Assembly: GCA_037379345.1 (NCBI GenBank)
Contig: CM074511.1
Span: 56,922,862-56,986,861 of the forward strand
Length of the DNA: 64,000 bases
From: Perna viridis
Lineage: Eukaryota
Reading direction: 5' to 3'
Shown here: one piece after another, positions 8,351 through 64,000 of the stretch
How positions within the stretch are numbered: the stretch's first letter is position 1
How the letters are laid out: each line of letters opens with the position of its first letter
The notes under the pieces: model-generated
Seen by the model: the letters and a program-made list of their open reading frames with translations, nothing else
What the model was told of the DNA's origin: nothing
The model's database searches: none
Made by a program: the position numbers and the translations under genes

Positions 8351-8798
8351 CTGGAACTAGAGAATACACATTAAGGCTAAGACAATCATCCACCTGCGAT
8401 CCTGAATGTTTTGCTATCCTGATATATTCTCGTACCATCCTTGATGCTATCTTGTCATAAAACTGACTGACCCCATTAAATGGCTGAGGACAAACACCTT
8501 TGAAGGTCGTGCACGCAATATAATCCTCCTTTCTATTTGGTATAGCATCTGAAGCTGGATGGAAAGTAAATATTATATTACGCTTCAATGAACCATAGTC
8601 TACTCCGAGAAATGCTTCAATGTACCTCAAATATGGTGCTGTTGGAAAACTTACAGTTAATCCACGGATTTCACCATTTCTAATTTTAACTTTTCTCTGT
8701 CCCCAACTCTTTTTCTCAATAATAAATGAGAACATCGGCAGTTGAGCAAACAATATTGTATAGACATAGAAATTGTTGAATATTCTTGACAACAACAT
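8351..8798 (-). CDS. Neuroligin-like variable first coding exon V1 (signal-like N-terminus + N-terminal cholinesterase-like segment); exon only
   Basis: ATG at 8798 (MLLSRIFNNFYVYTILFAQLPMFSF). Motifs NGEIRGL, IEAFLGVDYG, FKGVCPQ-x33-CLSLNVY. Ends CCA G|GTAATC (GT at 8350-8349). Length 448 nt = 149 codons + 1, phase 1. Confidence 0.85.
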
Positions 8799-11530
8799 AT
8801 TCACTAAGGAATAAACTCTAACACGTAATACTGTTACATCTTTACCAACTGTAATAACAATCAACAAGATCACCGTAACACAATTAATATCTGTACATCT
8901 TCTATCTTTCGACAATATGTTAACAACCTCTCCACCGTAATGAGAATGGCGGTTTACATCATATTCAAGAAAGGATCAGAAAGCCAGATCAGTGCAATCC
9001 AGATCGACCCACAACGGTGTTTCCAATAAGATTTGGTAAGGTCGACTAATTTGTTCATTCCAAGACAGTTCTCCATAGGAAGTATTAGATAAAGGAAATC
9101 GAAATGAAAGTCAAAACTAAATTCTTACCAAATGATCCAATATTTATAGGATAATAAAGACAGACTCTAATTTCCATTAGGGACGATGCTCAATTTGATT
9201 TGACCGTAAATCAGAGTGCAGCGCAACAGCAAATGTTCAACAGAAGTATACATCTTCTTTTTCACTTAATTTGTTTATCTCCTAGTTCCTGGTGAGACCT
9301 ATTTCGTTATTGGATCCATGGTTTATAACTGCTTCCAACTGTATGCCTGGTATTCCCTATCTTCTCTTTATTTATAACCATTTTCTTCTGGATTGGAATA
9401 GATGAACAAAACTATGGTCTTAACGTCGCGATCGCCTTAAACGGTATCATTAAACCTCGATTTTGTTTTTCGTTTTCATAATTCCTAACCACATCATTTG
9501 CCAAAGGATATAAGACCAAGTGCTCATAGTTAACTGCATAATTGTGTCGTAAATAAAATATTTATCCCAGTATTGGTAATAACTATTAGTGCCAATGTGG
9601 TTTATAGGATTTATGTCAGAACAATTCAAACTAGAATACGTAGAATACACAGACGTTTGATCAAGCTCCTGATTGTGTAGATGAATCCTCAAATATATCA
9701 AAAAGTGAACAAGTTGCAAATGAAGCCAAGTACTATTAACAACATTCTGACAGCCCCAAATGTTAATTCAGCATCATGTTGCTGTCAATTTTCACAACTT
9801 TCAAAGCCCTTGTTATTGAAGGGCTATCAAGACGGAAATAACAGCACAGCTGAAGTGTATAATACCGAATTTCTGATTATAATGTGATATGACATGGAGT
9901 TCTTCTAAATTGGCAAGCTATAAAAGGGGAAGTAATAATATTAGTACCGAGAAAATTTCATTTATCATGTCTACAGCTGTTACAACTTGTGACTTTTATT
10001 GGAAATATGTTGGTACTGTAATCGCAGTTGGTATGAAGGGATGTAATACATCAAAGCTAAAATGTTCAGATATTGTATACTAATCGATTTGTATGTCTTT
10101 TTATATTATTTTTATTCATTTGGGTTAAAGTTTAAACAATGTTTATCTACAGACATATAAAATCTGTCTGTGCACCAGAACTGATAATATTGGGCAAGGG
10201 CTCACAAACTAAGTTGATAACCATAGGACTGATAACTCAAGATTGTCTGATCTTTACCAGTTATTAGTAATGAAGGTCGGTCAAATCTTTTTTTTTTTTT
10301 TTGTAAATCAACAATATGATTTTTTTGTTGTTGTAAAAACATGCACATTATAAAATTTCTATTACACATAAGAAAAAGAAAGAAGGGAGGTCGGGAGTGC
10401 ACCAAAGGGTTAATACCAGAATGTCAAAACTGGCAACAATCGTTGAGATTTTATCATATCATAAACTACAAAACAAACATAAACATGAATTCAAATGAAT
10501 AAATTTGCTCAATATTTCTTTATATTTTCACTAAATTATGAATACATTTCTTTCCTTTTTTCAATTAAGGCACTTTTTAAAAATTAAATTAAAATGATAG
10601 TTTACAATGGGTATAAGTAAAAATAAATCCAGAAGGACCCATGAGATATAAAACTGGACAATACCTGCATTTAGCTTCCCGAACCATTGGATTCCTTTCA
10701 AATTAGTAAATAAAATAATTCATATTTGCCATTCAATAAGACAATCAAAGAGAAAGACAAATAGCATACTTTAAAAGCTTAGCAATAACCTTGTGAAATA
10801 TTATTAAAATTATTAAATCATTTGATTGAAAGTAAAAACAGTTAATAAAGACTTACAGTCTACCAAAACGTTTGCTAATTTTCCTATTCACATCCTTTAG
10901 CTCGTTACACAGAATATTGCTTTTTCTTATCATTCTTCTACCATACCAATACTCACTCAGAATTCAATTCAGATTGAAAATGTTATTCATTTCACTAAAC
11001 ATGATAAATAATAATAATAATAATAATAAAATAAAAAAAACAAAAGCAAAAACAAAACCAAAACCAAAATGAAACAATCCAGCAAGACAAACCAAAACAA
11101 ACATGTCTCCATTTTCCGTTCAACTGGATAATTATTCGTGAATTCCAACCGTGCTCCAAATGTATACGCTATTCAAAATCATACTTATCTCACAAAAATG
11201 TTTGTATCACACAAAACATATTATATTAAAAGTTCCTATGACCGTCACCGTTAAGTTGTCTGAAACTGCGAGTGAACCTCCACAACGATAAAAGTTTTTC
11301 GGTTTTCTGAGTTGTTTTTGTCCAATGAACAGTCAACTGGACTAACATTCCTGTCAAAACCGGAAGGCGTACCCTACCGTTGCATGTATTCCAAGTCCCA
11401 AGTTGTCGGTAGAGACCAGGTTATTGATTTATTTTTTGTTTTGTTCTTGTTTAATTCGATTCCATCATACTTTATGCTGCTTTTACCGTTTTCTTTTCTA
11501 AATTTTTATCTTTATCTGTCTATTTTTAAC

Positions 11531-12047
11531 GCCCCTTGCAGGTCCGGGTGTTAAAAGAATAGGCCTGCAGCAGCGCTAAGCTTGTCGTAAAAGGCGACTA
11601 AATAGTGCTCAGAACCCCAGCCGGGGGCTAGGGCGCTCTGCCCACAGAGCAACTGGGATGTGTGCCCCAGGTGGTGGAACGGGGTACCCCTGGCGTGTTA
11701 CATGCTGGGGTTGTCAGGCTATAATACGGAAAACCTGACCGCAAACCATAGTGGTGCACCGTGTTGGGAAAGATGCCACGTTCCTCGCACGTTAAAGAGC
11801 CCTACTGTGGTATTCTCCCGGAGTAGGAACCATATGGCTCCGCCACAGGAGGCTAAATTGCCCGACCCTACCCATGTCTCCCTATTTCCAGTGGCAATCA
11901 AAATATGTCGACCCCATTATCCTTGTGTCCCATCCCTTTTTCATTTCATCATCATTTCATGTTCATTTTATCATCAATTTCATGTTCATCGTCTGAATAT
12001 AGCTGAAATATTGCTGCTCGGACGTTAAACCCCAACAAACAAACAAA
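11531..12047 (+). mobile_element. Non-autonomous SINE-like retroposon with structured 5' end and (CAAA)n tail
   Basis: High similarity to 28261-28749. Tail gacgttaaaccccaacaaacaaacaaac. Degenerate TSD ctatttttaac / ctaattttgac. Internal gcacgttaaagagccc recalls the Meta-SINE core (from memory, not searched). Confidence 0.8.
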
Positions 12048-12483
12048 CTAATTTTGACAGGTTTTGACAATGGCCCTTTTGGGTGAGTTTCCCCATAGTT
12101 CTTCAACAAAGACTCTTATTGTTCATCTGTGAACCAAACCTTTCACGTTGTTTTTCTGTTGTCTTACTAAACAAACGTTTTATGACGACATTACAACAAT
12201 CAAATTGAGTCATCAAAGACGTCGTCCACGCCTTCACAGCTGCGGACTATATTTAAGTTTTTCGGTTTATTGTCACGGCCCAGACAAAAAGATATTTCCA
12301 AACCAATTTAGCAATGGACAATTTGCTGTGTAAAAGAAAGTTTGACAGAAGCCATTATATCTCCCACTAAATATACAGTCGAATTAGAGAAAAACGGATG
12401 CAGCGTTATGCGAACAAGACACTGCATTATTTATTGAGGTAACAATCAAAGTAGCAGGTGCCTAGTAAGATTTGTCCATATAT

Positions 12484-13188
12484 AAGAGTAATCAAGAGAA
12501 CCAAGGTTATAGCGGTAATCAAAAGAATGCAATCCAGGGACAAAGACTACACATGGAAAACAGACATACACAACAAAGAACATAAAGTAACTAAAATCAT
12601 ACATACAAAGTAACAAAAGCAAATGAGCAACTCGGACTCTACTAAAAACTGGGAGCATGGACCAGGTGCACCGGTAGGGTAAGCGTCCTCTGCTATCCTA
12701 GAAACACCCGCCGAGTTGCTCATAAAAAGTCAAGTCCGGGGTAGACAAACGAGGAAAGGAAAACTATGACCCGTTGAATAAATCAGTTTTCATGGTGCAG
12801 ATGAATACACCATAACGATCCACGAGTTCATGATGACGACCATAAAACTTCTGTAGTGATAACTTCAATCTTGTAGCAACTTAACTCTGTTCCAGAAGCC
12901 TATTTGTTAGAGTTCTAGCGCGATACAAAGTCTGCCTAATTGCAGCAAGCACTGGCATAACGTATGAGTTGTGATACGAAAACTTCATGCGCAGATAGAT
13001 ACTGAAGTGATAGTGCCATAGATGAAAGGAAAGTTGATAATTCGGAAAGAAAAGTCATCACGTTTTTCGTAAAATTTGGTTAATAGTTTTCCTTTACCAT
13101 CGATCTCTAAGTGTAGGTCAAGATATGAGGCTGACTTTACTGTGTCTGTAGTATCCTTTATATCAAGTTCTTTGGGGTAGATGCGATG
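12484..13188 (-). mobile_element. Penelope-like (Naiad-type) retroelement 3' fragment
   Basis: HRIYPKELDIKDTTDTVKSASYLDLHLEID...KRDDFSFRIINFPF, plus the family 3' UTR ending ttgattactctt. Confidence 0.85.
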
Positions 13189-14716
13189 ATTTAAAAACGT
13201 TAAGGGAGAATTGCGTAACAATAACAACTCTCGGATTGTTGATATCAAAAATCGAAAAACCTTGAATTTAAGTAACATGTGATCCCTGCTATATCCGTTT
13301 AACGATGTGTTAAAAGCTTTCAAAATGTCATGAACTAACTGTCAAGTCATTAAAGAACAGTTCATTTGGTTAAGTCAAAAACCAAGAAAATAATTAATAC
13401 CCCGGCTTCTTTTGGATTGAACAATCTTACAGATTACATCCTGTCGTTTCCATGTGCAAACTGGATCTTAATCAATCCTTTAAGAAACAATTCTTAGGAA
13501 TTCATACGATTGACTTAACTAATTATGCCTGAAAAAGCACTATCAAATATAATCAATCTCAATGAAATTTGGCATCACAAAACTTTATATGCTTTTCAGA
13601 GAGAACATTTACGTGTATTGCGCAATTGCAGTTTGATTATGATCGATATTGTAAAATATTTTAAATTAGCTTAGTTGTTTCTGTGATATAATATTACATC
13701 ATAAATGTGACAATAAAATCTTTCAACGACGATTTCAAAGGGTTGTGAAGTCTTTTCCGATGTTTCAAGCTAGAACAATATAAGCAGAAAATAAAATAAA
13801 TGATGGGTCAGTGTGCTCGTTTTTGAGATATAAGTATTCGAAATTTTGGCGTGAAAAGGATTTCTCCTGACTTTTCACATGTTTTTTCTTAGTAGGTTTT
13901 ATCTATTGAAAACCTCAAAGAATTTCATAAGAACTTCCAAAATAACATTTTAAAGTGTGTTTAATGAAATTAATAAAATAAAAATGGGGTCACTGGGCAA
14001 AAAAAATACCAATGCTATGAAATAGATAAAACCAGAGAAGTCAGAAATTCTGACAATAAATGGCTAAACATAAGCAGCGAACATCCTGAAGATGAAGCAA
14101 AAAATGACTAAGACATCAATTTTCGTATGCTATGTTGAATGATTTAAAAAAAATAAATTACACATTCCCATCCGTTAAATACATCTGTCCACTCCGTATC
14201 GTACATTCCATTACCTTTCATAAGACAATCAAAAAAGATGTTCTTATCAAGGCTTATTCGTTCTTTACACTGTGGTGTGTTCTGTCATTGACGGAATAAG
14301 CTACACATGTTATGATTAGTATATTTGATATTGGATATACAATAAATGTAATTGTAAATAATATAGATTAAACGTTATTGTCTTGGGGATGAAGGTGTAA
14401 TTATTTATTCCGAATTAATTAAATGTCTAGTAATTGACTTAATCAAGATTCTTTTAAACCTCCTCAGGAATCTTAGGTAGTTTTTAAGTTTAACCATTTT
14501 CATAAAAAAAAACAAAAACAAAAACAAAAACAACACATCCAACAACAAACACAAGACTTTCCTAATAAATGGCATTTTCTTATAATGGTTTTATTCAAAT
14601 TGATGTTAGTAATGTCCGGAAAATTACATCCTGAATTGAAGAGTTATATGACAGAGAATTGAAGTATTCTTCGTGTAAAAGAAACATGATTGAACGAGGT
14701 CTGAATGAAAAAAAAA

Positions 14717-14928
14717 ACTAAATTATACTGATAGTATAGACATTACTTCACTAAATTATACTGATACTATAGACATTACTTCACTAAGTTTTACTGATAG
14801 TATAGACATTACTTCACTAAATTATACTGATAGTATAGACATTACTTCACTAAGTTATACTGATACTATAGACATTACTTCACTAAGTTTTACTGATAGT
14901 ATAGACATTACTTCACTAAGTTTTACTG
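14717..14928. repeat. Minisatellite, 33-bp unit, about 6.4 copies
   Basis: actaa(a/g)tt(a/t)tactgata(g/c)tatagacattacttc head-to-tail with no spacers. Confidence 0.95.
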
Positions 14929-15300
14929 CTTATTGATATATATATATATGTGTCATTTGAATAGCAAGACCAATACTATACTAATGACGTACAATCAAAA
15001 CAATAATCTGAATGTTTATAGAATTATTACGGTGTAAAACAAACAAAACAGATTACTACAAGACCTCGTGTACATCTTCTTAATTGCTTCATTAAGTTAG
15101 AAAAGTTTCTTCTTTATTTCATAGTTATTATAGCTTATATTAATTCATAAATTAGTAATAAATAATTGATAAGAGAAAACCTTTAACTACCAAGCCATTC
15201 TATTTTCCTTCTCCTTTAGCTTCCGGTAAAAAAAAGTTTTACAACGATTCTGTTCACACACTAAAACTTATTTTAATTTTGACCTTAAAGATACTTTTAC

Positions 15301-15715
15301 CTTTTATAGGAACATGTGTTATAAGATTCAAGCACTCTGACGATTTTTCAGGTATTTCAGAAACTACAGCATAAATTTTCTGTGCCACGTGTTTAGGTAC
15401 TTGGAGAACGTATTTGGTCCAATCTATGTCTTTTTGTACACACCCATGTCCTTTTCTTAGGTATGACTTCCGGTGTCGCCACTTTCGAGAAGAGGGCGGC
15501 ATAAATTGCATGTGTCCACCTCCAACGGAAGCATATGGAATTCCATAATAGCTATAAACTGGGAGTAAACTGGTAGTATTAGAAAAAGTTCTATAATGTC
15601 CTAACACGTGAACACGTCTTTTCCTATGGTGGTAATTAATAGATGACTTGTATCCACGATAAGCCGTTCCAGGTTGCAATATCAGAAGTATCACCACTGC
15701 TTTAAGGACTGTCAT
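15301..15715 (-). CDS. Neuroligin-like variable first coding exon V2
   Basis: ATG at 15715 (MTVLKAVVILLILQPGTA, signal-like). Motifs YYGIPYAS, QFMPPS..KW, CVQ-x33-CLNL..HVP. Ends AAA G|GTAAAA. Length 415 nt = 138 codons + 1. Confidence 0.85.
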
Positions 15716-26716: not shown

Positions 26717-27164
26717 CTAAAACAGGAACAAATAAGTTAATAAGAAAACATTCCTCGTATTGGTTGATCAGAAACCGAGATTTCCTTTCCATTTGTTCTA
26801 TATATAGCAATGGAAACATTTCTTTCATTTCTTTTTCATTCATGTCACGTTGAGGACATACTCCATAGCTATTATTGTAAGAGAAAATGTTCAACTGTGA
26901 CAGTGACATAGTGGGAAACATCTCGCGTGTTCTAAAACGTAAGACTTGTTCATTTGTGGCAAATTGAATGTCTTTGAACACTTGAACTTTTCGCAACTGT
27001 GAATTCCAAAACGTTTTTAACATTCCAAGTAAGTTGCCATTGTTAAGCAGATACCGACGAAGCTCGATACTTTTAAAGACTTTAGGTTTATATCCAATGT
27101 TCAGTTGAATAATAAAAAATAGAAGGAAACATAATCTCCAACTGTTCTCAAAAAGGGCCTTCAT
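26717..27164 (-). CDS. Neuroligin-like variable first coding exon V3
   Basis: ATG at 27164 (MKALFENSWRLCFLLFFIIQLNIG). Motifs NGNLLG, VQVFKDIQFA, LRF, GVCPQ...NQYEECFLINLFVP. Ends TTA G|GTAAGT. Length 448 nt = 149 codons + 1. Confidence 0.85.
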
Positions 27165-28260: not shown

Positions 28261-28749
28261 TAGGCCTGCAGCACTGCTAAGCTTGGCGTAAAAGGCGACT
28301 AAATAGTGTTCAGAACCCTAGCCGTGGGCTACGACACTCTGCCCACAGAGTAACTGGGTTGTGTGCCCGTGGTGGTAGAATGGGGTACCCTGGCCTGTTA
28401 CATGCTGGGGTTGTCAGGCTATAATACGGAAAACCTGACTGCAAACCATAGTGGTGCACCGTGTTGGGAAAGACGCCACGTTCCTCGCACGTTAAAGAAC
28501 CCTGCTATGGTATTCGATAGGAGTAGGAACCTTTGCGCTCCGCCACAGGAGGCTAAATTGCCCGACCTTACCCATCCCTCCTTTTTTCTAGTGGCAATCA
28601 AAATTTCTCGACCCTATTGTCCTTGTGTCCCGTCCCATTTTTAATTTCATCATCATTTCATGTTCATCTTACCATCCACTTCATGTTCATCGCCTGAATA
28701 TAGCTGAAATATTGCTGCTCGGGCGTTAAACCCAAACAAACAAACAAAC
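28261..28749 (+). mobile_element. Second, slightly 5'-truncated copy of the same SINE-like retroposon
   Basis: Colinear with 11560-12047. TSD-like attttcttttca / attttttttca. Confidence 0.8.
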
Positions 28750-33279: not shown

Positions 33280-33691
33280 CTTTGGAAGAAACAAACATGT
33301 TAAGAACCAGACAATCCTCATGTTGTCGTATAATATACGGTTGTAATCTTCTCAAATTCGTCATTTTTATAGAAGAGTAATTGACTATAGATTGTCTTTC
33401 CTTATCCAGTGACTGTGGACAAACACATCCTCTGTTTTGACCGGAAAAACGTCTAACTTCCATCCATTGTTCTACAGAGCCTATTGGCTCCTCAAATCGT
33501 TTCGAGCTTGCGAAGTGAAATCCGCGGAAAACCTCGGCTGGTGATAAAGAATCATTTTCAAACTTAAATATCATTCCAGATACAGGCCCGTGCCTTGTGG
33601 TGAAAAGGCTAGGTGCAGTCTGCCATCGGCAATTCGCCAAATAGAGATGAAATGATATAAAAAACCAGAGTAAACTCGATGATGTATCCAT
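33280..33691 (-). CDS. Neuroligin-like variable first coding exon V4
   Basis: ATG at 33691 (MDTSSSLLWFFISFHLYLANC). Motifs TTRHGPVSG, AEVFRGFHFAS, RFEEP, VCPQ...LRRLQPYIIRQHEDCLVLNMFV. Ends AAA G|GTGAGT. Length 412 nt = 137 codons + 1. Confidence 0.88.
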
Positions 33692-35504
33692 TTACAATAT
33701 TATTTAGTGAGCAATGCCATGCAAATTCATCGATTACGAATGAAAAGCATCGTTTATGCAAACAATGTGTTTGCAACCAATTATTTATGGTGACATTCTG
33801 TATTAAATAATTCAGATGGTGATGATACAACTTCAAATTTACATTTAAAACGAGCCTTAAATAGATTCAGAGCAGCTAATGCCTCAGCTTTAACTTCCTG
33901 AGACTGAGAATTTATGTTATAGATCAAAACCAGACCATTGCTAAATGGTAACAGTGTCAGGATGGATTGATCCAACATTTCAAAATATACAAATAGAGAA
34001 CATGTCCATAAAAAATTCCATGGAATTGATTAAATTCCATTTCCCTTGATTAGACAACCAGTCAACCATTACTATAAGCATCAAAGGTCTATCCTGCAGT
34101 TAATGACTATTATCTAACTCGTTACTAGCAAAATGTAAACAGTACATCCATTGGTAAATAAAACATTTATGTTTTGAATGTTAAGTCACGGCTACATCTA
34201 TCGCGTAATTCTTAATCTGGTATGGCACATTTCTTAATGACAGTGAAGATATCAGTCTGAGGATTTATACGGAACACATTAAAAGATGATTTGTAAAGGT
34301 ATCGATTACATGGAGAATAAATTAAAATTTTGATAAATTTTGTGGAAAGGCATTGAATTTTTTATACTACATTTATGATATTTTATATGCGTCTTGCGTT
34401 GTCATACGGAAAAAAAATGTTTCTAATGTTTACACATTTTTCAGTGTATTAAATGTTTGCACTTTTGTTCATAGCAGAACTAAAATATTTACTGGTCTGA
34501 TGTAATACTAATCATTTTAGTCGCTTATCCATTTATCATCTATTTTGTAAAAAGTTGACAGCATTTTGGAATGTTAAAAGGTTCTCAACAATAATAACGC
34601 CCTCATCTGTGGCATTTGTGTTATTTGAATTTAAGATAATCCTATATAAAACAATAGAAAATAGAACAAATATGGTAAAACGCAACAAATGCACCAATAT
34701 TTGACCTAAATAAAAAAAATAGTAAATAAAAAAGTCTACAACAAGTGTCAACACAGCTTTAAGTAAACTCTGAGGGACACCAATAATACAATAATAATAA
34801 CAATAATACATCCGATTCTCTCCAAGTAATACATCACTATCCACGATATAGGCAATATGAGATATCCACTTAAAGAATGCTCACAGTTACTTAAAGCTAG
34901 CTCAAAACACATTAAAGATTGACAATAGCATTAAAACTACAAGCAATAGAAACAAACGATCACGACAATTCTAGTGGACTGGAGTTGGGGTTGTAACGTG
35001 AAGTACTAAAAGTCATAATGACTTTAGTTTTTATTTAGGGATGCAATTAAAGGTGGAATATCTCTGATTAGTGGAAACAAGGTTCAAAGAATAGAAAATA
35101 ATTACAATAATGCTCTTAAAGTATATGTTCTTCAACTCAAGAATTAACATTGAATTATAATATATGAAATTTTTTTTTTCAATAATGGTACATTGTTTGT
35201 GACAAAAAGTATTGTAGAAAGATAAAAAGAAGCAATCCCCTTCACCACACACTTTGATTTTCTGAATTATGTAATTTTGTTATTGGCTGAGACTAAATGC
35301 TACGATAGAACCATTTTATAAAATCTCATAAAAACCTTTAATAAACGTCATGTTTAAAATAAAAAAAAATCATATCTCATGAGAAGAAAAGGTTGAACCC
35401 TTAACTGGGTAAGTATGAAGTCGAATTACTGTACATTATTGTATGTAAGTACGTATTATCCTTTTACATAATTTACTTAAATCTTTTCATTAAATTCTTT
35501 AATA

Positions 35505-37372
35505 AAAGTAATCAAGGGAACCAAAATTCTAGTGGAAATCAAAATAATGTAATCATGGGACAAAGGCCAGACATGGAAAACAGACAAACACAACAAAGAA
35601 CATAAAATAACTACATACAAAGTAACAAAAGTAAATATGCAACTGGACCTCCACTAATAATCGGGAGCATGGACCAGGTGCACCTGTAGGGTAGCGTCCT
35701 CAGCTTTTCTAAAAACACCCAACGAGTTGATCTTAAAAAAGTCAAGACACGTTGAACAAATCAGTTTTCAAGGTGCAGATGGATATACCGTAACGATCCG
35801 CGAGCTCATGATTACGACCATAAAACTTCTGTAGTGATGACTACAATCTTGTAACAACATAACCGTTTTCCAGAAGCCAAATTATAAGAAGTCTAGCGCA
35901 ATACAGTCAATCTCTGGCGTAACGTACGAGTTTTGATATGAAAACTCCATACGCGGGTGCTTAAGGGATGTTGCCTCAGATGAAAGGAAAGATGACAGTA
36001 CAGAATGATTAGTTATCGCGTTTTTTTGTATAGTTTGGTTAATAGTTTTCCTTTACCACTGATCTCCAAGTAGAAGTTAAGATATGAGGCTGACGTCACA
36101 GTAATTATAGTATCGTTTATCTTAAGTTCTTTGGGGGTAGATGCGATGTCCCCGAAACTAGGATTGTTTAACGATGATACGTCATCTGTATTACGGAAAC
36201 TGAGCTTAAAGTACAGTGTGTATCTAGCTAAACGCAGTTCTTTCTTTCGGATCAGTTCAACTATAAGGTCATCCTCATAAGAGTAAAGAAATAGGTCCGT
36301 ATGTAGGGAAACACAATTTATTCCCATAGGAATGCCGACCGTTTGTTGAAAAACACATCCACCACACTGGACAAATATGATCAAAACTTCCAGCATTTTG
36401 AAAATATCTTCTTTGGTATATTTGGATGATGATTTGAAATTATTTTTTACAAAGCATGGCAATCTCTATGTATAAATTGTCCATAACTGGTGTTTGTCCC
36501 TGCATTACATTCTTTTGATTTCCGCTAGAATCTTGGTTCCCTTGATTACTCTTTCTACTTAGAACTACATTTTTGTATATAAGTGTACCGTCTTTTTTGC
36601 GTAGCAACGATGTATAACGTTTTTGAGGCGAAAATTTAACTGAGTAAGGAACATCGAAGTAAAAAAATAGTTGAAAAATCATAGGTGTTAATGCTATTGT
36701 ATTCTGATAATAATTTTGAATTAAGGGTTTTCAAAAGATCTTTTAAATTTTTCAATCAAAATTGAATTAATACCACTATGGGAGTAACAAGTGCTGTGGT
36801 AGGACTAGAGACACCCTTTGACAGCTGTGAGAAGTTAAAAGTTTTGAAAGAGGTTTGGTGGAACATTTTGTAGATCCAGCTATGAAGCGTTGTTTGTATG
36901 GATTCTTGTAGAGTTTAAGAATCCAGTACATAGACGGTAGATCACTATAATCGTCTTTGATAAAGAGACCAAAAGAGGGTAGCACAGATTTATGGTTTTC
37001 CACTATCTCTTCTTTTGAGTGTAGTGGTAGTATAGGTCTTAACACTACTATTATTTTCTACGTCAACCTCTGATAGTAATCATTGGATGTAAAACGTTTT
37101 GCAGATAAAACAGTGTTGGTTGGGCTTTGTTTGCTGGTTCGACTATGTATTTGTCATGAATGGTTGGCAATGTTTTAGCTACATGGGGATCTTTAAAAAC
37201 TTTCATACGTTGTAAAATTAAAGACCTCAAAGCCTTTACCCACGCTGACAGAGAAATAATGTCTTCTTGTTCTAGTATTATCCATTTTGTTGCGTAGTCC
37301 TCCATGGCATCCATAGGAACTTTAAGGTTAAAATTCAAATTTATGAATCGTGGTTCACGGTACTCAGGACCT
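35505..37372 (-). mobile_element. Longest Penelope-like (Naiad-type) copy, frameshifted RT
   Basis: LPSMYWILKLYKNPYKQRFIAGS, FQQTVGIPMG, DLFLYSYE, FRNTDDV. Coding similarity ends after the RT thumb with no C-terminal GIY-YIG, as in N-terminal-EN Naiad elements. Confidence 0.88.
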
Positions 37373-38454: not shown

Positions 38455-38626
38455 NNNNNNNNNNNNNNNNNNNNNNNNNNNNNNNNNNNNNNNNNNNNNN
38501 NNNNNNNNNNNNNNNNNNNNNNNNNNNNNNNNNNNNNNNNNNNNNNNNNNNNNNNNNNNNNNNNNNNNNNNNNNNNNNNNNNNNNNNNNNNNNNNNNNNN
38601 NNNNNNNNNNNNNNNNNNNNNNNNNN
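38455..38626. other. Assembly gap (172 N)
   Basis: Run of N. Confidence 1.

Positions 38627-43810: not shown

Positions 43811-43811
<1 letters not shown>

Positions 43812-47316: not shown

Positions 47317-47376
<60 letters not shown>
47317..47376. repeat. (TA)n microsatellite
   Basis: Direct inspection. Confidence 0.97.
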
Positions 47377-47378
<2 letters not shown>

Positions 47379-51041: not shown

Positions 51042-51498
51042 CTTTTCTAGGAATATTGAGATTAAGCATTAAACACTCCTCCCTTCTATAAGTAATATAT
51101 TGTTTTATATGATGTAAGCGTTCCTGGAGGATCACAAAGGATAACGGTTCATTTTGCATCGTGAACTTTTCTCTCTGAGGACAAACACCTCTAAAACTTG
51201 TATTGTAAAAGACGCGTGTTCCAAGCCATTTTTCAAGAGTTCCCGATGGAGGCATAAACCTCAATCTTTTTTGTCTTGTAGAAGCAAATTGGAGACCACT
51301 AAAAACTTCAGTTGGCAGTAGATTTTCCCGTTTAAATATCATTCCGACCAGACTACCATATCGTGTAGTAAATACACGTGGCTCCAACCTTCTACGTGAT
51401 ACTGTACTTCTTTCACATCTTGTAAACTTTGTTATGAATATTAAACTTTGCCATAATATAACTCCTGTAAACATGGATTTAACGTCAGAGGCCAGCAT
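51042..51498 (-). CDS. Neuroligin-like variable first coding exon V5
   Basis: ATG at 51498, with an alternative in-frame ATG at 51474. Motifs RVFTTRYGSLVG, TEVFSGLQFAS, LRFMPP, KWLGTR, FRGVCPQ...EECLMLNLNIP. Ends AAA G|GTAATG. Length 457 nt = 152 codons + 1. Confidence 0.88.
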
Positions 51499-54400
51499 GC
51501 TATACTTATTGATACTTTACAAGTCCTAGTTAACAAGAACCTTGTTATTCAGATGACTTTGTTAAAGTCCAATTATAAAGCTCCCATTAAACAGAGACAT
51601 AAGACGTCCTTGTTGGCTCCTCCTATAATTTACTTATGACTCTTGATAAACAAATAAGAATTATATACTGTAACGTATTCTTAAACCTTTTCCATCATAA
51701 ATAGACCATGCTGGTTATTGGACAAGTCTTCCGATATGATATCAAAAGTAATTTCAGCCGCGCATGGCATCATACAATAATGGTACATGTTATTAAATTA
51801 GGAAAATATCAGCAGATTGGATTCGTAAACAGTGACATGCAGCTTTTATGTTCTCCTTTATCTAATAGAACTTGTCCACAGAGAAAAAATTCTTCAACTC
51901 AAAAAGACCTTATCAGTAGTCTGGGATATACAAGAATGGGCATTGTTAGCCTGTAACCATCACTCCAATAAATTCAAAAATGATATTATATTTTATAGCT
52001 GGGTAATAGTTGTTCACATTGGAACATCAATAAGATACGAAAAACCAGCATTGTTGATGTAAAAGTCAATTTTACGTTTGTTCTTTTCAGTTTTATGAAT
52101 GGTTTGTTTCCTTGGTTCAACGAAAAATTGAAACACAGACACTAAATTTCTTACAAGACTAAATTAATAAGTAACTCTTTCATGCTCTATTTATTGAATT
52201 TCCAGGAAAAATTACTGACTAATACGTACCAAAATATGAAACAAGTGTCCTTGAAACTGTTTTCAAGGGTGTTGCAACGTAGGTGGCATCACGTTGTCGC
52301 AACCAATAGTATTTTCCACTGTATAGAAAGACCATTGAAGATTCTAATCATAGCTTATAGATAGTCGTCAAAGTATGTTTGATGGGAAACATATGGGTGT
52401 CCTGTTCATCAAATGCTTTAATGTCATACCAGGAATGGTATTGTGAAGAAAACAATTAAAAGTTGACGAATTTTTAATATTCTATTTTTATTGAGTTTAA
52501 TTTCATTATGTTAACGTCATTGGTAATAATATGTCTTGTCTTGAGGAACAATAATGACAATCTGCATAGAGGTTTGAGAAAATTTGATCTGTCGAAAACA
52601 AGTTCTCTGCTTGATGAAGATAGTTTTAAAATAAGTTGATAACTGAAATAACACACATACCATTACTGAATGAAAACATTAAAGTACTTAGTAAGACTAA
52701 ATTATAAATGTTTGTGCTGTTTTAAATCGGATCATAAAAAGTTATACATACTTATGTATTAGTCCTGTACGAAAACCTAACGAATATTTTTTTTTTCACG
52801 TTGTAATATTGAGCATTAAATGAATTTATATATGTAACCGGTCTGAATCACGTCCGTTGACACGCCTTTTAAGGTTTATATTTAAAAGTGCAATTTTTAA
52901 CATGTCAAAAGAAGATTCATAACAGCCACAAATTTTATCTGAAGGAATGATCTCTGGACTTAACTGGGACAATAATGAAAATCAATGATAAAAATCATAT
53001 CTGCAAATACGTAATAGTTATAAATGAGTTTTTGATTTCCCCAGCAACCAAGTAATAAAATGTCTTATCTTGGAAAGCGATCTTTTGATACAGTCCTGGG
53101 GACAAAACTGTGGTATTGGTATATTATACAAAAATAATGAAAGCTATAACTGTTGGTATGTGAAATTTGCTGCTTATGGCATTGGTTTAGTTTTATAGCA
53201 CACGTAGATAATAAATAAAGGTATATTTATCCCTTTAGACATTTTAATATTAATCCGAGTTAAAATGCAACTTAGTGTGCAGATTGCTTCGTGATATTAT
53301 GAAAAAAAGAGAAAACAGGGTTAAAGAGTGTCGTTTGCAGGTGTTTAGTTTGATCATAAAGTATCTTATCCCCTTCCCAAACCGTTGAAAACAATCTTAA
53401 AATTAATCTTGTTGGACGTGTTTTTATAGTTAAACAACTGCAAGCAGTTCCAAAATTGCTGTAAAATTCTCGAAAACATTTGTTAAATGGTACCGACTTA
53501 TACCTTACTATTTTATGATTTACATGTGGCATTGGAAATCATGATAAAATAACTGCTTCCCAACTGATTTGTAATAACCACTCCTTCCATAGAGTATATC
53601 TTTTACTTCAAACAGAATTGATAATTTCTTCATTTTATCTGTAAATGTTGTTTCTTTTTAAGGATACAGGCGTCAAATTGTGTTTTCTTATCAATGTAAG
53701 TAACTTTTTTGCTAGCACTTATAGGATAATTAATTGGAAAGAGAGTTCTCAAAATATTATCACGAATTCAAATGACACCACAGTCCTGATAATTTTGGTA
53801 ATTTGGTTATTTTTGTTAGAACTAATTTCTCTTATTTTTTACATCATAAAATATAATGCAAATCTATATAGATCATTTTGTGGAGAATCATGTCAAGTTT
53901 TAAATCATTTGTGTCTATGTGAAAAACATGAAACGGCTCCGTAGAACTAGAACAAAAAAAATCCATAAATATTCCGAATAAATATACTATCAGAAACGTA
54001 ACCATTTGGTGTCATGATATTATCATGTTAGACACTACCCTTATGGGCTCTTAAAATGTTATGTCAAAATGAAGCTGATATTTACAAATAATCATATCAA
54101 AGAAAAGTTCAATATATAGGTTACACTTATAAACAATCCCGAATCTGTTATTGATTGACAGGTATTTTCCTAAATTACCTACATTTACTCTTACTGAACT
54201 TCCTTGAACGTATTTAGATGTATAATTGCTTTATTTAACGTTAGACAGACAGAATGAGATGAAGGGTTACCAACAACTATTATTGTTTAACATCATTAAT
54301 GTAAGAACTTTGAGTGGTTTAAATGTTAATTGGATGTGAAAAGTCGCATTGAAACAATATTTTGTGAGAGTTCTTTTATGAATAAAGTTGGAAACAGTTT

Positions 54401-55497: not shown

Positions 55498-55894
55498 CTT
55501 TCATTGGAACATACACATTGATTTTTAGACACCCCTCCGTTTGCTTAAGCAAATAAGGCTCTATTCTCCGTAAACGACTTAAAACGTAAAATGACAGAGT
55601 CATGCTCATCGACCTCAAATGACGAAATTGTTGGTAGCAAACAACCATTGAACTAGAAGCCATGAATGATCTCGAATGATTCCATTCCTTGTTCAGTATC
55701 AATGGTTCACGAAATCTGCCAAGTAAGCCATATTGAATTCCTCGGAACGCTTTAATTGTTCCTAAAGACTGATTTTGGAATGGGATCAGCATTCCGGACA
55801 TTGGTCGTAAATTGATGCTTTTTTCACAACACACATACCACACTTCAGTTATCAAAAGCAGAGCCCAGATATTTTCCAAAATAGTACACCACAT
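55498..55894 (-). CDS. Neuroligin-like variable first coding exon V6
   Basis: ATG at 55894 (MWCTILENIWALLLITEVWYVCC). Motifs IKAFRGIQYG, RFREP, VCYQ...RLRRIEPYLLKQTEGCLKINVYVP. Ends AAA G|GTAAGT. Length 397 nt = 132 codons + 1. Confidence 0.85.
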
Positions 55895-56909: not shown

Positions 56910-57290
56910 CTGCACTGGCCTGTAACAATAGTTATATACTAGTCAACAAAAGAATTGATTGAGCATTCTAATCAATAACAATATTTAACCCATTATGTAA
57001 GAAACAATGCCAAATAAATAAAGTATTTATTCTTTAACGTTCTATTTGAGACAGTAACAAAGCAGTTTCTTGACCAAATACGGACAGTTAAAAATAAGTT
57101 TCCGGAATTTCAGTTTGCCGAATTAAATAGGGAAATTATTACATCTTTGAGCTGACCCGAAATTCTGTGGTTGTGGGATCAGGTATTGCTTGCGTCGAAC
57201 TTTCAGCACACAATTTGCGGTTGCGGGAATGTAGAAGACGTATCCTTGGGTCATGACCGCACGGCGTCTGAGTCATTATGATATGGGCCA

Positions 57291-57410
57291 GTTTGCGTCA
57301 GGTGCACCGATAAGGTAACCGTCCTCTGCTTTTTGAAGAAACATCCGCCGAGTTGTTCATAAAATGTCAAGTCCTGGGTAGACGAAAGAAGAAAGGAAAA
57401 CTATGACACC
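57291..57410 (-). mobile_element. Penelope-like family 3' UTR fragment
   Basis: caggtgcaccgataaggtaaccgtcctctgc...ggaaaactatgacac matches the 48529-48636 region. Confidence 0.75.
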
Positions 57411-59479: not shown

Positions 59480-60600
59480 AAATAAAACTGAAGATAAGAA
59501 AATTAAGATATCATAATCAATTAAGAACTAAAAATTGCAATATGAACCCATCCAATCCCCCCAAATGGGAGGGACACAGAGGATGTGCTCCGGAAGAATA
59601 AGCAGGTATTACGCCAACAGCGGCGCCTGTCACATTGAATTGCAAGTAAATGAAATCCGGTAACTGTTTAGTTTTAATAATGTATCTCCCCCGATACGCT
59701 CTTGTCAAGGCGTAGTATCACAACGGTCCCATAAAAAAAAGAACGGAACAACTCACAACTTGATGATTTCATTTAATCTTACGAAGTTTGCTGATGCAAA
59801 TAAAATGGAAATGTTGATAACTAATAGACAAATTAAGTGTCCGGGATGAAAAGTCACCTTTATACATAGAACAATTCAGCGTAGGAACATTAAACGACTG
59901 ATCTTGATCTTAATAATTACATATTGATACACCATGCGATAATTAACTTACCCAACATTAATGATTTATTTGAAAATGTTCAAAGAACGTGTCATCTAAG
60001 TCTAATTGTAATACCCTTGCATGATAGAAATGTGACCTAAAACTTGCAGTGAAGAAAATATGCTCGCACCGTTGTGAGTCAAAAGACCTAGTTCTTATTG
60101 CTCCTCCTACACGGTACGTCAAAGGAGCATCACCAGTGTTGCTAGTAAGGGTTGTCAATCCAGTAAGGCATGAAATCTTACCGAAAATACCTTGTCTCAT
60201 CTGTGAGTAAAAAAAATTATATCGGTCAATCAAGTTGTGTTGTCGGTCGTAAAAATTCTGTGGACAACAACAGTGGAACATATTCCTGTCTTAAATTTTA
60301 AAAGTTATTTGCTTTCAAAGAAAGTCTGTGTATAGATAAAATACCAGGCTTGACAGTAAATGTTTGACTATGTTGTGTATGCTCCTTGGCTAGTGACATT
60401 GGTATATAGCCACTAAGAAAGGGGAAGTTTATAATTTGAAAGCCAAAACCACCTCGTGTGTCATTTAGATTTGATTTTAAACGTCCTGCATCATTCAAGG
60501 TGTATTAATGATCATATTAATATCAAGTTCATTTGGGTAGAATAGATGTAAGAAAGTCTTTACACCAGGAAAAAGTGCGTTAACGATGGTATGTATAGCA
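59480..60600 (-). mobile_element. Divergent second Penelope-like family, heavily decayed
   Basis: YPNELDI, DTRGGFGFQIINFPFLSGYIP, QNFYDRQHNLIDRYN, and a related 3' motif tgcttattcttccggagcac. Confidence 0.6.
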
Positions 60601-61475
60601 AAATAAAAAAGCAACGCAAAAAAAAAAAAAAAAACGTTTTCATAGGAACTTTTTTGACCGGAATTACCGATGAAATATTTTTTGCAGAGATGATAATATG
60701 ATAACTACAATATCATAATTAGCCACTTAGACTTTTCAAGACGTAAAAACCATATTATTTTGAGTAAAACATATTTAGGTAAAATTGAATAAATAATTTT
60801 GTGATGATAAAGTGCATATAAATAAGTTATTATTATTGGGAATCATGGATGGTCAATGAAAACAGAATACTTCCAATAATCGTCATTGCTATTCATTTTC
60901 CAGATCGGAAGTAAAGCAAAGAAGTAGACAAATTACTAAACAATTCAGAATCAATTGGCGTATGCCAAATCCTAAAAATTATTCAACGTTTGATAGACAG
61001 GATAGCATGCGAATCAAATGCATGTTAAACATTCTAATATGACGTGCTTCAAACCTCTTTAAACGACAGCCATGGTAAAAAGAGATAAACACATGACCAA
61101 CATTTCGTGTAACACATAGGTTGCGTCTTTTCAAAATTTTAAAGAAACTATTTCTGTTAGCATCAAAATCAATTACGGAAACTCCATTTCATCATTATTT
61201 TACGACGGGTTGGCCGTTTATGTTGTTATTTAAGCCCTTTCTATCGCTCGGGGGTAAAATAATGCGACGTAAATGGCCAAATCGTGGTAAAACAATGATA
61301 AAATGGAGTTTCCGTGATTTATATCTTTATTTAAAAAATAAAGCACAAAATTTTAAATGCAAAAACCAAAAAGATGGGAAAAGGCACCTAACAGCTTTGA
61401 AGAGGAAATTAAAATCAAACAATGTATCTGAATGGGCAGTAGTTTTCTTCAGTTTGAATAAGCAGAATCCAATGA

Positions 61476-62178
61476 ATTATTGCTTTCTGACCTATTTCTT
61501 CACTCTTATGAGGCAAACTTTATAACTAATCTAATCCAAAAGAAGACACTTCGTTTAGCCATATCCTTTGATCTCAGTTTCCGCTTTATAGATGACGTAT
61601 TATCGTCGAACAGTCCTAGTTTCGGAGATTTTATACATCGCATCTACCCTACAGAACTTGAGATAAAGGATACTAGACAATGTGAAGTCAGCCTCCTATC
61701 TTGACCTAAACTTTGAGATTAATGGTAAAGGAAAACTATTGACAAAACTGTACTACAAACGCAATGACTTTTTAATCTGCATTTCTTTTCATCTGTAGCA
61801 ACTTCAACATCCCTGCAGAACCTGCGTGTGGAGTTTTCACATCACACCTCATTCTTTATGCCAGAACTTGCTGTAACAACGCAGACTTTTTTCAGCGCGC
61901 TAGACTGCTTACAATTGGGCTTCTGGAAAAGGGTTATATGGTAAGATTGAAGTGGTCACAACAGAAGTTTTATGGTCGTCATCATGAACTCGTGGATCAT
62001 TACGGTGTTCCCATCTGCACCACGAGAACCGTTTTATTCAACGTGTCATAGTTTTTCTTTTTCGTCTGCCCGGAATTGACTTTTATGAGCAACTCAGCGG
62101 GTGTTTTTAGAAAAGCACAGAAAGATTAACCTACCGGTACACCTTGTCCACGCTCCCAGTTTTTAGTGAAGTCCGAGT
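61476..62178 (+). mobile_element. Penelope-like (Naiad-type) 3' fragment
   Basis: DLFLHSYEANF...SFRFIDDVLS...HRIYPTELEIKDT plus thumb and partial 3' UTR. Confidence 0.88.
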
Positions 62179-63749
62179 CGAACGAGATAACAAGATATAT
62201 ATATGTATACGTGGTTACATGGCATTCACATTTTGGCAAGTAATATGTCCTCAAATGTGTAATATGTTCCAAAAAATCAGTTATTTCAGAAAACTTTAAT
62301 CGCGTTAGGTATCATCATCAGAATCTTCCAATAATCACTGCTACTTATTTGTTTAAGCTGAAGCACGACCTACTAAAATTAGCTTTAAAAATGCTTTTGT
62401 ACTGTATACGTTCATTGAAGTTCCCCTTAAAAGATGTAATATAGCAAACTTTTCTCCACTGCATAATTGATGTAAAGAAAAGACTATAAAAGTCTCGATA
62501 GTTTATTAAACATTTCTAGCCAAAGGCTCTAAATTTCAACGTTTAAAAATCTCAATTACAATTAACGATAACCAGTTGCAAACAATTTAGAAATAATACA
62601 AGTAAGTTTATTCCTCTACTGTTGCACCTGGTTCGTGTTTCCAGTTTGTGTCTGAGTTGTTAAACATATATATTCCTTTTGTGGTTCCCATTTGTTTTAG
62701 CCCAATTCCATACAATTCAGTTTGATCCTAGCATAAAGACTGGTCAGGATACATATTCAATTATAACCAATCTTTTATTCCGGTACTTTGCAGTAAACTA
62801 TAACTTAAAATGAAGAATCATTTACTACCTACATAATGACCCGATTACTTAAACAGGTTGAATGCACTATGTGTTCAAGCATCAACTTGCTTTTAAGTAC
62901 AATTAAAGAAAAGCCAACCTTCAACATGAGGTAATTTTCTAATATTTTCCTCAGGAATCTGAGAAAAATTCTCTTTCAATTTATTTCGTTTACCTTGCGG
63001 ATATGACAAGTAAGTCTGTAGGTAAAATCCTTCAAGGAATTATTGTCAATATCAAATAGAGAGCATTTCGTTGTAATTGAAAGAGTAGACTTAACTTATT
63101 GGCCATATGCAAGTTGATAATTCGTAGTCTGTCCCGAAGCTTAGAATTATCAAAGCTTGAGAGAACTGGAATTAAAAAAAAAAAGTTGTTTACCGATTTT
63201 TTCCCCCTTAGTCTAAAGTGTATTTTCAGTTCGACACAAATTTTAAATGCACTAAGTTTTTTGACAACAATGAAATGTCTTAGGTTGAATTCCAATCAAT
63301 TAATAATGATAATAACAATACGAAATTTCATTTGAAAATCATGTACATGTAGGCAGTCAATCTATGTCTTCAAACTTAACAAGACATAAAATGATTATTT
63401 CAATGCTCGAAGGCATTTTTACCGTATATTGTCACTAGCAGGGATAGAAGCAGTGAGGAAAATTGACGAATCAAATGTCTTCTATTGAATTGTTAAATAA
63501 AAACAAATTTGGTTCAACCTGATTAAAAGCGCGTCTTCCTGGGTAAAAATATGCACTAAATTATTTTTGCCTTATAGATCATGAGATACATTGATAAAAA
63601 ATGACGATTGACAAACAAGAATAGTGGCGGGAGTAAATTTTTAAAACGTTTATAGAATCTTTTGTAAAATGCAATATTGACTTAATTGTTATCAAATGAT
63701 TCTTTAACAAATTTGTCATCATTGCTAAAGAATTGTTACAATTACTAAC

Positions 63750-64000
63750 CTTTGACTAGGATGTAAAGATTAAGATTCAGGCACTCCTCTGATATCTGTA
63801 AAACAAAAGGTTCAATATTCCTTAAACGATTACGTAAAAAATCACTGGAGTTTATAATTTGAGGACAAACACTTCTAAAACGTCTGTATGAAAATACTCT
63901 CACTGACAACCATTTCTCCAGAGAACCAGTTGGAGGCATGTATCTCATCTTGTAACTTTTGGTTGAAGCATACTGAAATCCATTAAATATCTCCACAGGC
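63750..64000 (-). CDS. Neuroligin-like variable first coding exon V7 (5' part beyond window edge)
   Basis: Frame is open to the window edge: PVEIFNGFQYAS..MRYMPP..KW..FRSVCPQ...RLRNIEPFVLQISEECLNLNLYILVK. Ends AAA G|GTTAGT, phase 1. Confidence 0.85.

What the first reader, a model, noticed from the sequence alone, without database searches (positions are those of the whole stretch)
8351..64000. Clustered neuroligin: a protocadherin/sDscam-style array of variable first exons feeding an unseen constant region
SEEN: seven minus-strand ORF segments (8351-8798, 15301-15715, 26717-27164, 33280-33691, 51042-51498, 55498-55894, 63750-edge) encode the same homologous stretch: signal-like N-terminus (V1-V6), G-x2/3-G, F-x-G-x-x-[YF], R-F-x-x-P, V-C-P-Q, [ED]-C-L-x-[LI]-N, with some substitutions. 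Homology stops at the same point in every copy, exactly 10 codons after the second Cys, at a G|GT donor in phase 1. Donors are GTAATC, GTAAAA, GTAAGT, GTGAGT, GTAATG, GTAAGT, GTTAGT. The spacers (4-17 kb) show repeats and non-coding DNA; I found no PVMV.IHG, NYRLG, GGDP or transmembrane-exon sequence. KNOWN: the vertebrate neuroligin first coding exon covers the same segment and ends in phase 1 beside splice site A. Clustered protocadherins, UGT1A and chelicerate sDscam use tandem variable 5' exons spliced to common exons. INFERENCE: one gene makes at least 7 neuroligin-like isoforms with different N-terminal subdomains on a shared body, a candidate cell-identity or synaptic recognition code. 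I do not know of this architecture being described for neuroligins, but I cannot run a literature search.
Basis: partly seen in the sequence, partly recalled or inferred. Interest (0 to 1): 0.95.

Follow-up and report, generated by a model that had tools for sequence, protein, structure and literature searches.

The report
Mussel neuroligin gene with eight alternative first exons
A mussel gene for a neuroligin-like synaptic adhesion protein carries eight interchangeable first coding exons ahead of one shared body, like clustered protocadherins, and I found no paper describing this layout for neuroligins, although it already shows up as unexplained isoform lists in public annotations of other bivalves.

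Summary
The window holds seven minus-strand carboxylesterase/neuroligin-type first coding exons. Each has a start codon and a hydrophobic leader, and each ends at a phase-1 G|GT donor 10 codons after the second Cys.

An eighth exon lies 15 kb left of the window. The predicted constant region exists as a single set 37.5 kb left of the window. It has a phase-1 acceptor, a non-catalytic GHGYG site, a transmembrane helix and a T-x-V tail. No constant exons lie in the spacers.

Four V exons compared with a related species give dN/dS of 0.09-0.18 at saturated dS. Identity collapses right after the donor. Each has a single-species-pair conserved block (85-100% identical) upstream.

RefSeq isoforms of the Mytilus orthologue join orthologues of V0, V1, V5 and V6 to the same constant exon. 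Oysters, clams, scallops and two basal gastropods show the same pattern.

This genome has two more such clusters, with 12 and 5 V exons.

Promoter choice and any recognition code remain inference. Six literature searches found no description. Verdict: real, and a new variant of a known kind.

The parts
8351..8798 (-). V1: alternative first coding exon (Met, leader, N-terminal ~110 residues of the cholinesterase-like domain). Donor G|GTAATC, phase 1.
   Evidence: Groups with C5_e, C2_b and the Mytilus isoforms P0171/P0174/P0295.
15301..15715 (-). V2: alternative first coding exon. Donor G|GTAAAA, phase 1.
   Evidence: dN/dS 0.11 (dS 1.66) against the related-species contig L050.
15751..15950 (-). 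Conserved non-coding block upstream of V2; candidate promoter or 5' UTR.
   Evidence: 90-94% identical to L050, while the intron does not align.
26717..27164 (-). V3: alternative first coding exon, the most divergent copy. Donor G|GTAAGT, phase 1.
   Evidence: Weak Pfam match (E 0.005), long branch and no clear orthologue.
33280..33691 (-). V4: alternative first coding exon. Donor G|GTGAGT, phase 1.
   Evidence: dN/dS 0.09 (dS 2.0) against L048.
33761..34159 (-). Conserved non-coding block upstream of V4.
   Evidence: Mostly 78-96% identical to L048 in 50-nt bins, with two weaker bins at 67% and 74%.
38455..38626 (.). Assembly gap inside the V4-V5 spacer. It touches no exon.
51042..51498 (-). 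V5: alternative first coding exon. Donor G|GTAATG, phase 1.
   Evidence: dN/dS 0.10 against L021. Its orthologue is the first exon of M. edulis isoform X6, P0277.
51645..51990 (-). Conserved non-coding block upstream of V5, single copy in the genome.
   Evidence: 84-96% identical to L021, against 58-87% in the exon. Unique in G000. No Rfam match.
55498..55894 (-). V6: alternative first coding exon, with VCYQ in place of VCPQ. Donor G|GTAAGT, phase 1.
   Evidence: Forms a clade with C5_f and the Mytilus isoforms P0274/P0285, which share the VCYQ signature.
63750..64000 (-). V7: 3' part of the most distal first coding exon, which continues to 64149 beyond the window. Donor G|GTTAGT, phase 1.
   Evidence: dN/dS 0.18 against L053. 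An upstream block at 64324-64624 is 77-100% identical (94-100% over 64374-64624).

Best explanation
The window is the 5' part of one neuroligin-like gene of about 107 kb in a mytilid mussel. Eight tandem, same-strand first coding exons are present: V0 outside the window and V1-V7 inside it. Each encodes its own start codon, signal peptide and the first ~110 mature residues of the non-catalytic cholinesterase-like ectodomain. That stretch covers the N-terminal beta strands, a variable 27-36-residue Cys-loop and the ...CL.LN.. strand.

Each V ends in a phase-1 donor. The proposal is that one V per transcript is spliced to the single phase-1 acceptor of constant exon C2. The remaining constant exons supply the rest of the ectodomain, the stalk, the transmembrane helix and a tail ending T-V-V. 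The result would be eight proteins with one body and different N-terminal subdomains.

Shown here: the anatomy, the single constant set, selection on the V exons, and the same junction in annotated isoforms of orthologues. Inferred: that each V is transcribed from its own promoter in the conserved block upstream of it, and that the isoforms differ in ligand or partner recognition.
For: Anatomy in this locus:
- There are 8 V exons and only one C2-C6 set in 264 kb.
- The C2 acceptor is phase 1 and the exon is 150 nt.
- The genome-wide PF00135 scan detects constant exons easily. Ordinary tandem genes at C1:57.99-58.28 Mb each show their own, but none lie between the V exons.
- All 26 V-type exons of the four paralogous loci keep Met, an open frame and the phase-1 donor.
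- The chance of an open 140-codon frame without constraint is 1.7e-5.

Selection:
- dN/dS is 0.09-0.18 with dS 1.1-2.0 for V2, V4, V5 and V7.
- Identity drops to background immediately after the donor.
- 150-400-nt upstream blocks reach 85-100% identity.

Orthologues:
- The constant exons are 87-100% identical to Mytilus 'neuroligin-4, X-linked-like'.
- Mytilus isoforms share an identical constant region for 411 residues after the junction and carry at least 7 distinct V N-termini joined at ...|DWNNTSKLPVMVFVHG.
- V types form supported clades across clusters and with Mytilus.
- The M. edulis gene spans about 261 kb with no other gene called inside it.
- The same isoform pattern occurs in oysters, clams, scallops, Patella and Haliotis.

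Family assignment:
- The best solved relatives by sequence and by fold are neuroligins 1-4, ahead of cholinesterases.
Against:
- The Mytilus and oyster isoforms are XP_ model proteins, and I could not inspect their RNA support.
- Logan fragments in the same clusters are single-exon genomic pieces, not junction evidence.
- V3 has a weak family match and no clear orthologue. V6 is atypical and only about 40% identical to its nearest relatives.
- No transcription start data exist, and no motif is shared by the 26 upstream regions.
- The residues of the vertebrate neurexin-binding loop (QGEGL) read RNEAY in the Mytilus orthologue aligned and in this locus's C4 exon, so neurexin binding is not assured.
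Confidence: 0.8

Rival explanations
1. One shared promoter and a non-coding leader exon lie upstream of V7. A single V is then chosen by mutually exclusive splicing (Dscam1-like) rather than by promoter choice.
For: No transcription start data are available. 24 kb lie between V7 and the next gene, an XK-related ORF. M. edulis isoform X1 has a 19-residue N-terminal extension ahead of the V Met, so some transcripts extend further 5'.
Against: Each of the four V exons examined has its own long conserved block 35-490 nt upstream of the ATG, while the last 50-175 nt before the ATG of V5 and V7 are less conserved. This fits promoter plus 5' UTR better than an acceptor site. Each V carries its own ATG and signal peptide. 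No strong polypyrimidine-AG sits directly before the ATGs of V4, V5 or V7.
Confidence: 0.1
2. In this paralogue only the proximal exon V0 (or a few exons) is still used. V1-V7 are relics of an array that works only in the sister clusters or in other species.
For: There is no RNA evidence for this locus. This cluster lacks the a, b and c V types that the chromosome-5 cluster and Mytilus keep. V3 and V6 look degenerate.
Against: All eight frames and donors are intact. dN/dS is about 0.1 at saturated dS for V2, V4, V5 and V7, and their upstream blocks are conserved. These comparisons are with orthologous contigs of this same paralogue type.
Confidence: 0.05
3. Each V ORF is an independent small gene. 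It would encode a secreted protein of 130-195 residues that reads through the donor to the next stop.
For: Gene callers on genomic contigs report these ORFs as stand-alone proteins (P0001, P0004-P0010).
Against: Conservation stops exactly at the G|GT, and the read-through tails differ between species. The ORF is a fragment of one globular fold that cannot stand alone. Orthologous V exons are joined to constant exons in RefSeq models.
Confidence: 0.02

Closest known systems
Vertebrate clustered protocadherins (Pcdh alpha and gamma)
   Same: A tandem array of paralogous variable 5' exons, each with its own start codon and signal peptide, is spliced to shared constant exons. Several paralogous clusters exist per genome. 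The product is a synaptic or neuronal surface protein.
   Different: A Pcdh variable exon encodes the whole ectodomain, the transmembrane helix and part of the tail. Here it encodes only the first fifth of one globular domain, which must fold together with the constant part. Pcdh promoters share a conserved sequence element; none was found here. Stochastic promoter choice is shown for Pcdh and is untested here.
Chelicerate sDscam alpha/beta (PMC4835542; PMC9258826)
   Same: An invertebrate adhesion receptor with tandemly arrayed 5' cassettes, alternative promoters and shared downstream exons.
   Different: sDscam belongs to the Ig superfamily. Its variable cassettes encode whole Ig domains and number 50-100. 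Homophilic specificity has been shown experimentally. Here the family is different (alpha/beta-hydrolase fold), there are 5-12 exons per cluster, and no binding data exist.
UGT1A locus
   Same: Alternative first exons, each thought to have its own promoter, are joined to common exons. Usage is tissue-specific rather than stochastic, which is a realistic model for this locus too.
   Different: UGT1A is an enzyme, and its exon 1 encodes a complete substrate-binding domain.
Vertebrate neuroligins NLGN1-4 with splice site A
   Same: The domain order is the same: a non-catalytic cholinesterase-like domain, a stalk, a transmembrane helix and a PDZ-type C-terminus. They are the best PDB relatives. 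The V/constant junction falls at the position of vertebrate splice site A.
   Different: Vertebrate genes have one first coding exon and vary this region only by short inserts. Residues of the vertebrate neurexin-binding loop are not conserved in the mussel proteins.

Membership tests
Neuroligin (non-catalytic cholinesterase-like adhesion molecule) | Extracellular carboxylesterase type-B (cholinesterase-like) domain | tested here: met
   The V exons match PF00135 positions 3-94. Constant exons C2-C4 match positions 98-486.
Neuroligin (non-catalytic cholinesterase-like adhesion molecule) | Catalytic serine of G-x-S-x-G replaced, so no esterase activity | tested here: met
   Exon C3 reads F-G-H-G-Y-G-A at the nucleophile elbow, with Gly in the Ser position, as in FGSGAGA of vertebrate neuroligins.
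Neuroligin (non-catalytic cholinesterase-like adhesion molecule) | Single transmembrane helix after a stalk, and a cytoplasmic tail with a C-terminal PDZ-type ligand | tested here: met
   The last exon holds a hydrophobic stretch SITVAIGCSLLFINILIYAGVYY followed by a basic stop-transfer, and the ORF ends ...ITVV*. The orthologue's helix aligns with the NLGN2 transmembrane segment and is predicted helical.
Neuroligin (non-catalytic cholinesterase-like adhesion molecule) | Closer to neuroligins than to esterases or cholinesterases | tested here: met
   Tested on the Mytilus orthologue. By sequence, NLGN4/2/1 give E 1e-132 to 1e-119, against 1e-74 or weaker for cholinesterases. By fold, all listed hits through rank 33 are neuroligins.
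Neuroligin (non-catalytic cholinesterase-like adhesion molecule) | Binds neurexin | not testable with these tools
   No mussel neurexin sequence was in hand. The vertebrate QGEGL loop reads RNEAY here, so binding cannot be assumed.
Variable-first-exon / constant-exon cluster (Pcdh, UGT1A, sDscam type) | Tandem same-strand array of paralogous 5' exons, each with its own ATG and leader, and a donor of common phase | tested here: met
   8 of 8 exons here, and 26 of 26 across the four loci.
Variable-first-exon / constant-exon cluster (Pcdh, UGT1A, sDscam type) | One set of constant exons downstream with a compatible acceptor, and none in the spacers | tested here: met
Variable-first-exon / constant-exon cluster (Pcdh, UGT1A, sDscam type) | Each variable exon is spliced to the first constant exon in mRNA | tested here: inconclusive
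   There is no RNA for this genome. In RefSeq model isoforms of orthologues, at least 7 Mytilus V exons and 4-5 V exons per oyster gene (and 3-5 per clam gene) are joined at the same point.
Variable-first-exon / constant-exon cluster (Pcdh, UGT1A, sDscam type) | A separate promoter for each variable exon | tested here: inconclusive
   Conserved, single-copy, V-specific blocks lie upstream of 4 of the 4 V exons examined. There are no start-site data and no shared motif.
Variable-first-exon / constant-exon cluster (Pcdh, UGT1A, sDscam type) | Stochastic or cell-specific choice giving cells distinct surface identities | not testable with these tools
   This needs single-cell or in situ expression data.

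The most novel reading that the evidence does not exclude
Bivalves run a neuroligin-based surface diversity system. In this mussel, 25 variable first exons in three clusters (8, 12 and 5) would be chosen by promoter, per neuron or per cell type. That would give synapses or cells distinct recognition properties, a convergent counterpart of clustered protocadherins and sDscam. Unusually, the variable unit would be a swappable piece of a single globular domain.
Probability: 0.2. Interest if true: 0.9.

Novelty: new variant of a known kind. Interest (0 to 1): 0.74.

Why it matters
Arrays of variable 5' exons spliced to constant exons are known for only a few receptor families: clustered protocadherins, sDscam and UGT1A. 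They are central to ideas about how neurons acquire surface identity.

This locus, with its two sister clusters, puts neuroligins into that class. Neuroligins are a core postsynaptic organiser family. V types are shared between the paralogous clusters and Mytilus. The isoform pattern also appears in oysters, clams, scallops and two basal gastropods, so the arrangement is old.

The case is also structurally unusual. The exchanged unit is about one fifth of a single alpha/beta-hydrolase fold, including its Cys-loop, and it ends at the position where vertebrates place splice site A.

It makes one question directly testable: do invertebrates without clustered protocadherins or hypervariable Dscam diversify synaptic adhesion in another way?

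The novelty is limited. The isoforms already sit in RefSeq annotations of Mytilus and oysters. What is new is the recognition and description of the architecture, not the raw data.

Tried and rejected
2. Fetching the sister clusters whole. Only 3.4-kb loci around each V exon were obtained.
3. Multi-stretch hits P0035 (Lineus) and P0108 (Solemya). They looked like V arrays read through by gene predictors, but they are concatenated whole catalytic esterases. Rejected.
4. Logan fragments in the Mytilus clusters (P0291, P0292, P0294). These are single-exon genomic pieces and give no junction evidence. Only one short hit, P0070, joins a V to C2/C3-type sequence.
5. A promoter motif shared by all V exons, in the manner of the Pcdh CSE. 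None stood out above the intron control.
6. Homeodomain-type sites. TAATCA and TGATTAAT were enriched in the four conserved blocks (a post hoc choice). This did not replicate on the other 22 upstream regions. Rejected.
7. The V5 upstream block is not a repeat, and the window has no Rfam match.
8. ORFs in the spacers have no Pfam match. Neighbouring ORFs are an XK-related protein, a reverse transcriptase and a bZIP protein.
9. Literature. Six searches and the review PMC10084454 gave no description of variable-first-exon neuroligins.
Natural full-length orthologues were used instead.
11. The AlphaFold model of M. edulis isoform X6 is only moderately confident in the V part (pLDDT 55-84). It supports the fold but not surface details.


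Full report
**1. The observation**

The window is AT-rich eukaryotic DNA (about 32% G+C). It corresponds to G000:C1:56922862-56986861 of a 723-Mb assembly.

Six match Pfam COesterase at profile positions about 3-94. The seventh is cut by the window edge and is complete at 63750-64149.

Each segment begins with Met and a hydrophobic leader.

The copies share only 20-26% identity. All are nevertheless open, and an unconstrained 140-codon frame of this composition stays open with probability 1.7e-5.

The assembly gap at 38455-38626 sits in the V4-V5 spacer, far from any homologous sequence, so no frame crosses it. I left it unfilled. It makes that spacer's length uncertain.

**2. What lies around it**

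I read 70 kb to the left and 130 kb to the right of the window.

- A profile of the V exons finds exactly one more copy, V0, at window -15077..-14645. It finds none to the right.
- The genome-wide Pfam scan and the six-frame reading show one set of constant exons on the same strand, 37.5 kb left of the window.
- C2 is 150 nt (C1:56885187-56885336). Its acceptor is ttttttttcag|AC, so it opens in phase 1 and reads D-WNNTSKLPVMVFVHGESY...NYRLGVL.
- C3 has GHGYG in place of the catalytic G-E-S-A-G.
- C4 and C5 follow. The last exon carries a transmembrane helix and a tail ending ITVV.
- None of these exons has a second copy anywhere in the 264 kb.
- As a control, the same Pfam scan shows ordinary tandem genes at C1:57.99-58.28 Mb, each with its own exon-2 and exon-3 matches. 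Private constant exons would therefore have been seen.
- The next gene to the right of V7 is an XK-related ORF about 24 kb away.

The gene spans about 107 kb: eight variable first exons, then one shared body.

**3. Are the V exons functional?**

Protein searches returned stand-alone ORFs from Logan genomic contigs of a related species (runs SRR26215657-9). These are orthologous to V2, V4, V5 and V7.

- Codon alignments give dN/dS of 0.11, 0.09, 0.10 and 0.18, with dS of 1.1-2.0.
- Nucleotide identity falls to background within a few bases after the donor.
- Upstream of each ATG lies a block of 150-400 nt whose 50-nt bins are mostly 85-100% identical, with a few weaker bins in the V4 block. That is more conserved than the exon itself.
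- The V5 block is single-copy in the genome. It matches no Rfam family.

So each of the four V exons examined is under purifying selection up to the splice donor, and each has its own constrained non-coding flank.

Between orthologues, the mature N-terminal core is 69% identical, the Cys-loop 49% and the signal peptide 24%.

**4. Are V exons joined to the constant exons?**

Natural full-length relatives served instead.

- The constant exons are 87% (C4) to 98-100% (C2) identical to Mytilus 'neuroligin-4, X-linked-like' RefSeq proteins. The genome is therefore a mytilid mussel other than Mytilus, in agreement with an earlier scan note.
- Isoforms of that one Mytilus gene are identical for 411 residues after the junction. 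They carry different N-termini of 130-170 residues, all joined at ...|DWNNTSKLPVMVFVHG.
- At least seven V types are used across four Mytilus species.
- In a maximum-likelihood tree these group with V0, V1, V5 and V6 of this locus.
- The M. edulis gene spans about 261 kb with nothing else called inside it.

The same pattern (N-termini 25-65% identical, the next 250 residues identical) appears in isoform sets of these species:

| Group | Species and number of V types |
|---|---|
| Oysters | Crassostrea virginica (two genes), Ostrea edulis, Saccostrea echinata and S. cucullata (4-5 V each) |
| Clams | Mercenaria (4), Ruditapes (5), Mya (3) |
| Scallops | Mizuhopecten (3), Argopecten (2) |
| Basal gastropods | Patella (2), Haliotis (2) |
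| Pattern not seen in the listed isoforms | Octopus, Biomphalaria |

These are model proteins, and I could not inspect their RNA support.

**5. The wider system in this genome**

The V profile finds 26 exons genome-wide:

- 8 at this locus;
- 12 upstream of a constant set at C5:16.28 Mb;
- 5 upstream of one at C2:63.05 Mb;
- 1 at a single-V paralogue at C2:36.21 Mb.

All 26 keep Met, an open frame and the phase-1 donor. The C4 exons of the four loci are 77-90% identical. V types group across clusters, in the same order along each cluster, and with Mytilus. The array therefore predates both the cluster duplications and the split from Mytilus.

**6. What it is and how it probably works**

Sequence search and fold search both place the Mytilus orthologue with neuroligins 1-4, ahead of cholinesterases. 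The V/constant junction aligns with the position of vertebrate splice site A.

The V part supplies the N-terminal strands, the Cys-loop and the strand ending ...LN.YVP of the alpha/beta-hydrolase fold. It must therefore fold together with the constant part. The conserved columns (G..G, F.G..YA, RF.PP, CPQ, EDCL.LN) fit core positions; this reading is inference.

From general knowledge of the NLGN-neurexin structures, the neurexin LNS6 contact residues lie in the constant part. The region around splice site A modulates other interactions. I did not test this. The vertebrate QGEGL loop is not conserved here.

My best reading, at 0.8, is alternative first exons spliced in cis to C2. Within that, I favour separate promoters over a shared leader with mutually exclusive splicing, because of the V-specific conserved upstream blocks.

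Whether the choice is stochastic, cell-type-specific or tissue-specific is open.

**7. Leads that failed**

- No motif is shared by the 26 upstream regions.
- An apparent enrichment of TAATCA/TGATTAAT in the four conserved blocks did not replicate on the other 22 regions.

**8. Novelty**

Six full-text searches and a 2022 review of wiring receptors list only protocadherins, Dscam1 and sDscam for this kind of organisation. None mentions neuroligins.

The isoforms are already in public annotation, so the data are not new, but the architecture appears undescribed. I rate it a new variant of a known kind.

Noticed in passing
G000:C5:16278689-16430814 (loci L030-L032, L035-L037, L039, L040, L043, L044, L046, L047): A sister cluster on the minus strand. 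Twelve intact V-type first exons lie upstream of one constant set whose C4 exon is 90% identical to this locus. It holds the a, b and c V types that the window's cluster lacks.
   Followed up: partly
G000:C2:62982660-63060227 (L033, L038, L041, L042, L045) and G000:C2:36208627-36216175 (L034): A third cluster on the plus strand with five V exons, and a paralogue with a single first exon. The V order is colinear with the other clusters.
   Followed up: partly
G000:C1:57986683-58276713: About 1 Mb from the window lies a run of at least seven COesterase-family genes. Each has its own exon-2 and exon-3 matches, so they are ordinary tandem duplicates. They served as a contrast to the V array.
   Followed up: no
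G000:C2:41076283-41208746 and G000:C4:19514495-20846324: Large tandem arrays of near-intronless full-length carboxylesterase genes, with PF00135 E-values down to 1e-132.
   Followed up: no
window 11660-12028 (+) and 28363-28644 (+); window 12985-13323 (-) and 36013-36462 (-): Two pairs of ORFs in the spacers share long identical peptide stretches. They are probably decayed mobile elements. None has a Pfam match.
   Followed up: partly
L010:4066-6234 (-), L012:4861-6315 (-), L017:7947-8810 (-): To the right of the array lie a single-exon 723-residue ORF with an XK-related domain, a reverse-transcriptase ORF and a bZIP ORF.
   Followed up: partly
Mytilus proteins P0273 versus P0280, and P0176 versus P0172: The Mytilus orthologue also has an 18-residue alternative cassette between the last two constant exons. 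It is independent of V choice. tblastn did not detect it at this locus.
   Followed up: partly
P0035 (Lineus longissimus XP_064631732.1) and P0108 (Solemya velum KAL5014963.1): Public gene models of 2475 and 1758 residues are three to four whole catalytic esterases fused head to tail. They are probably tandem genes merged by the gene predictor.
   Followed up: partly
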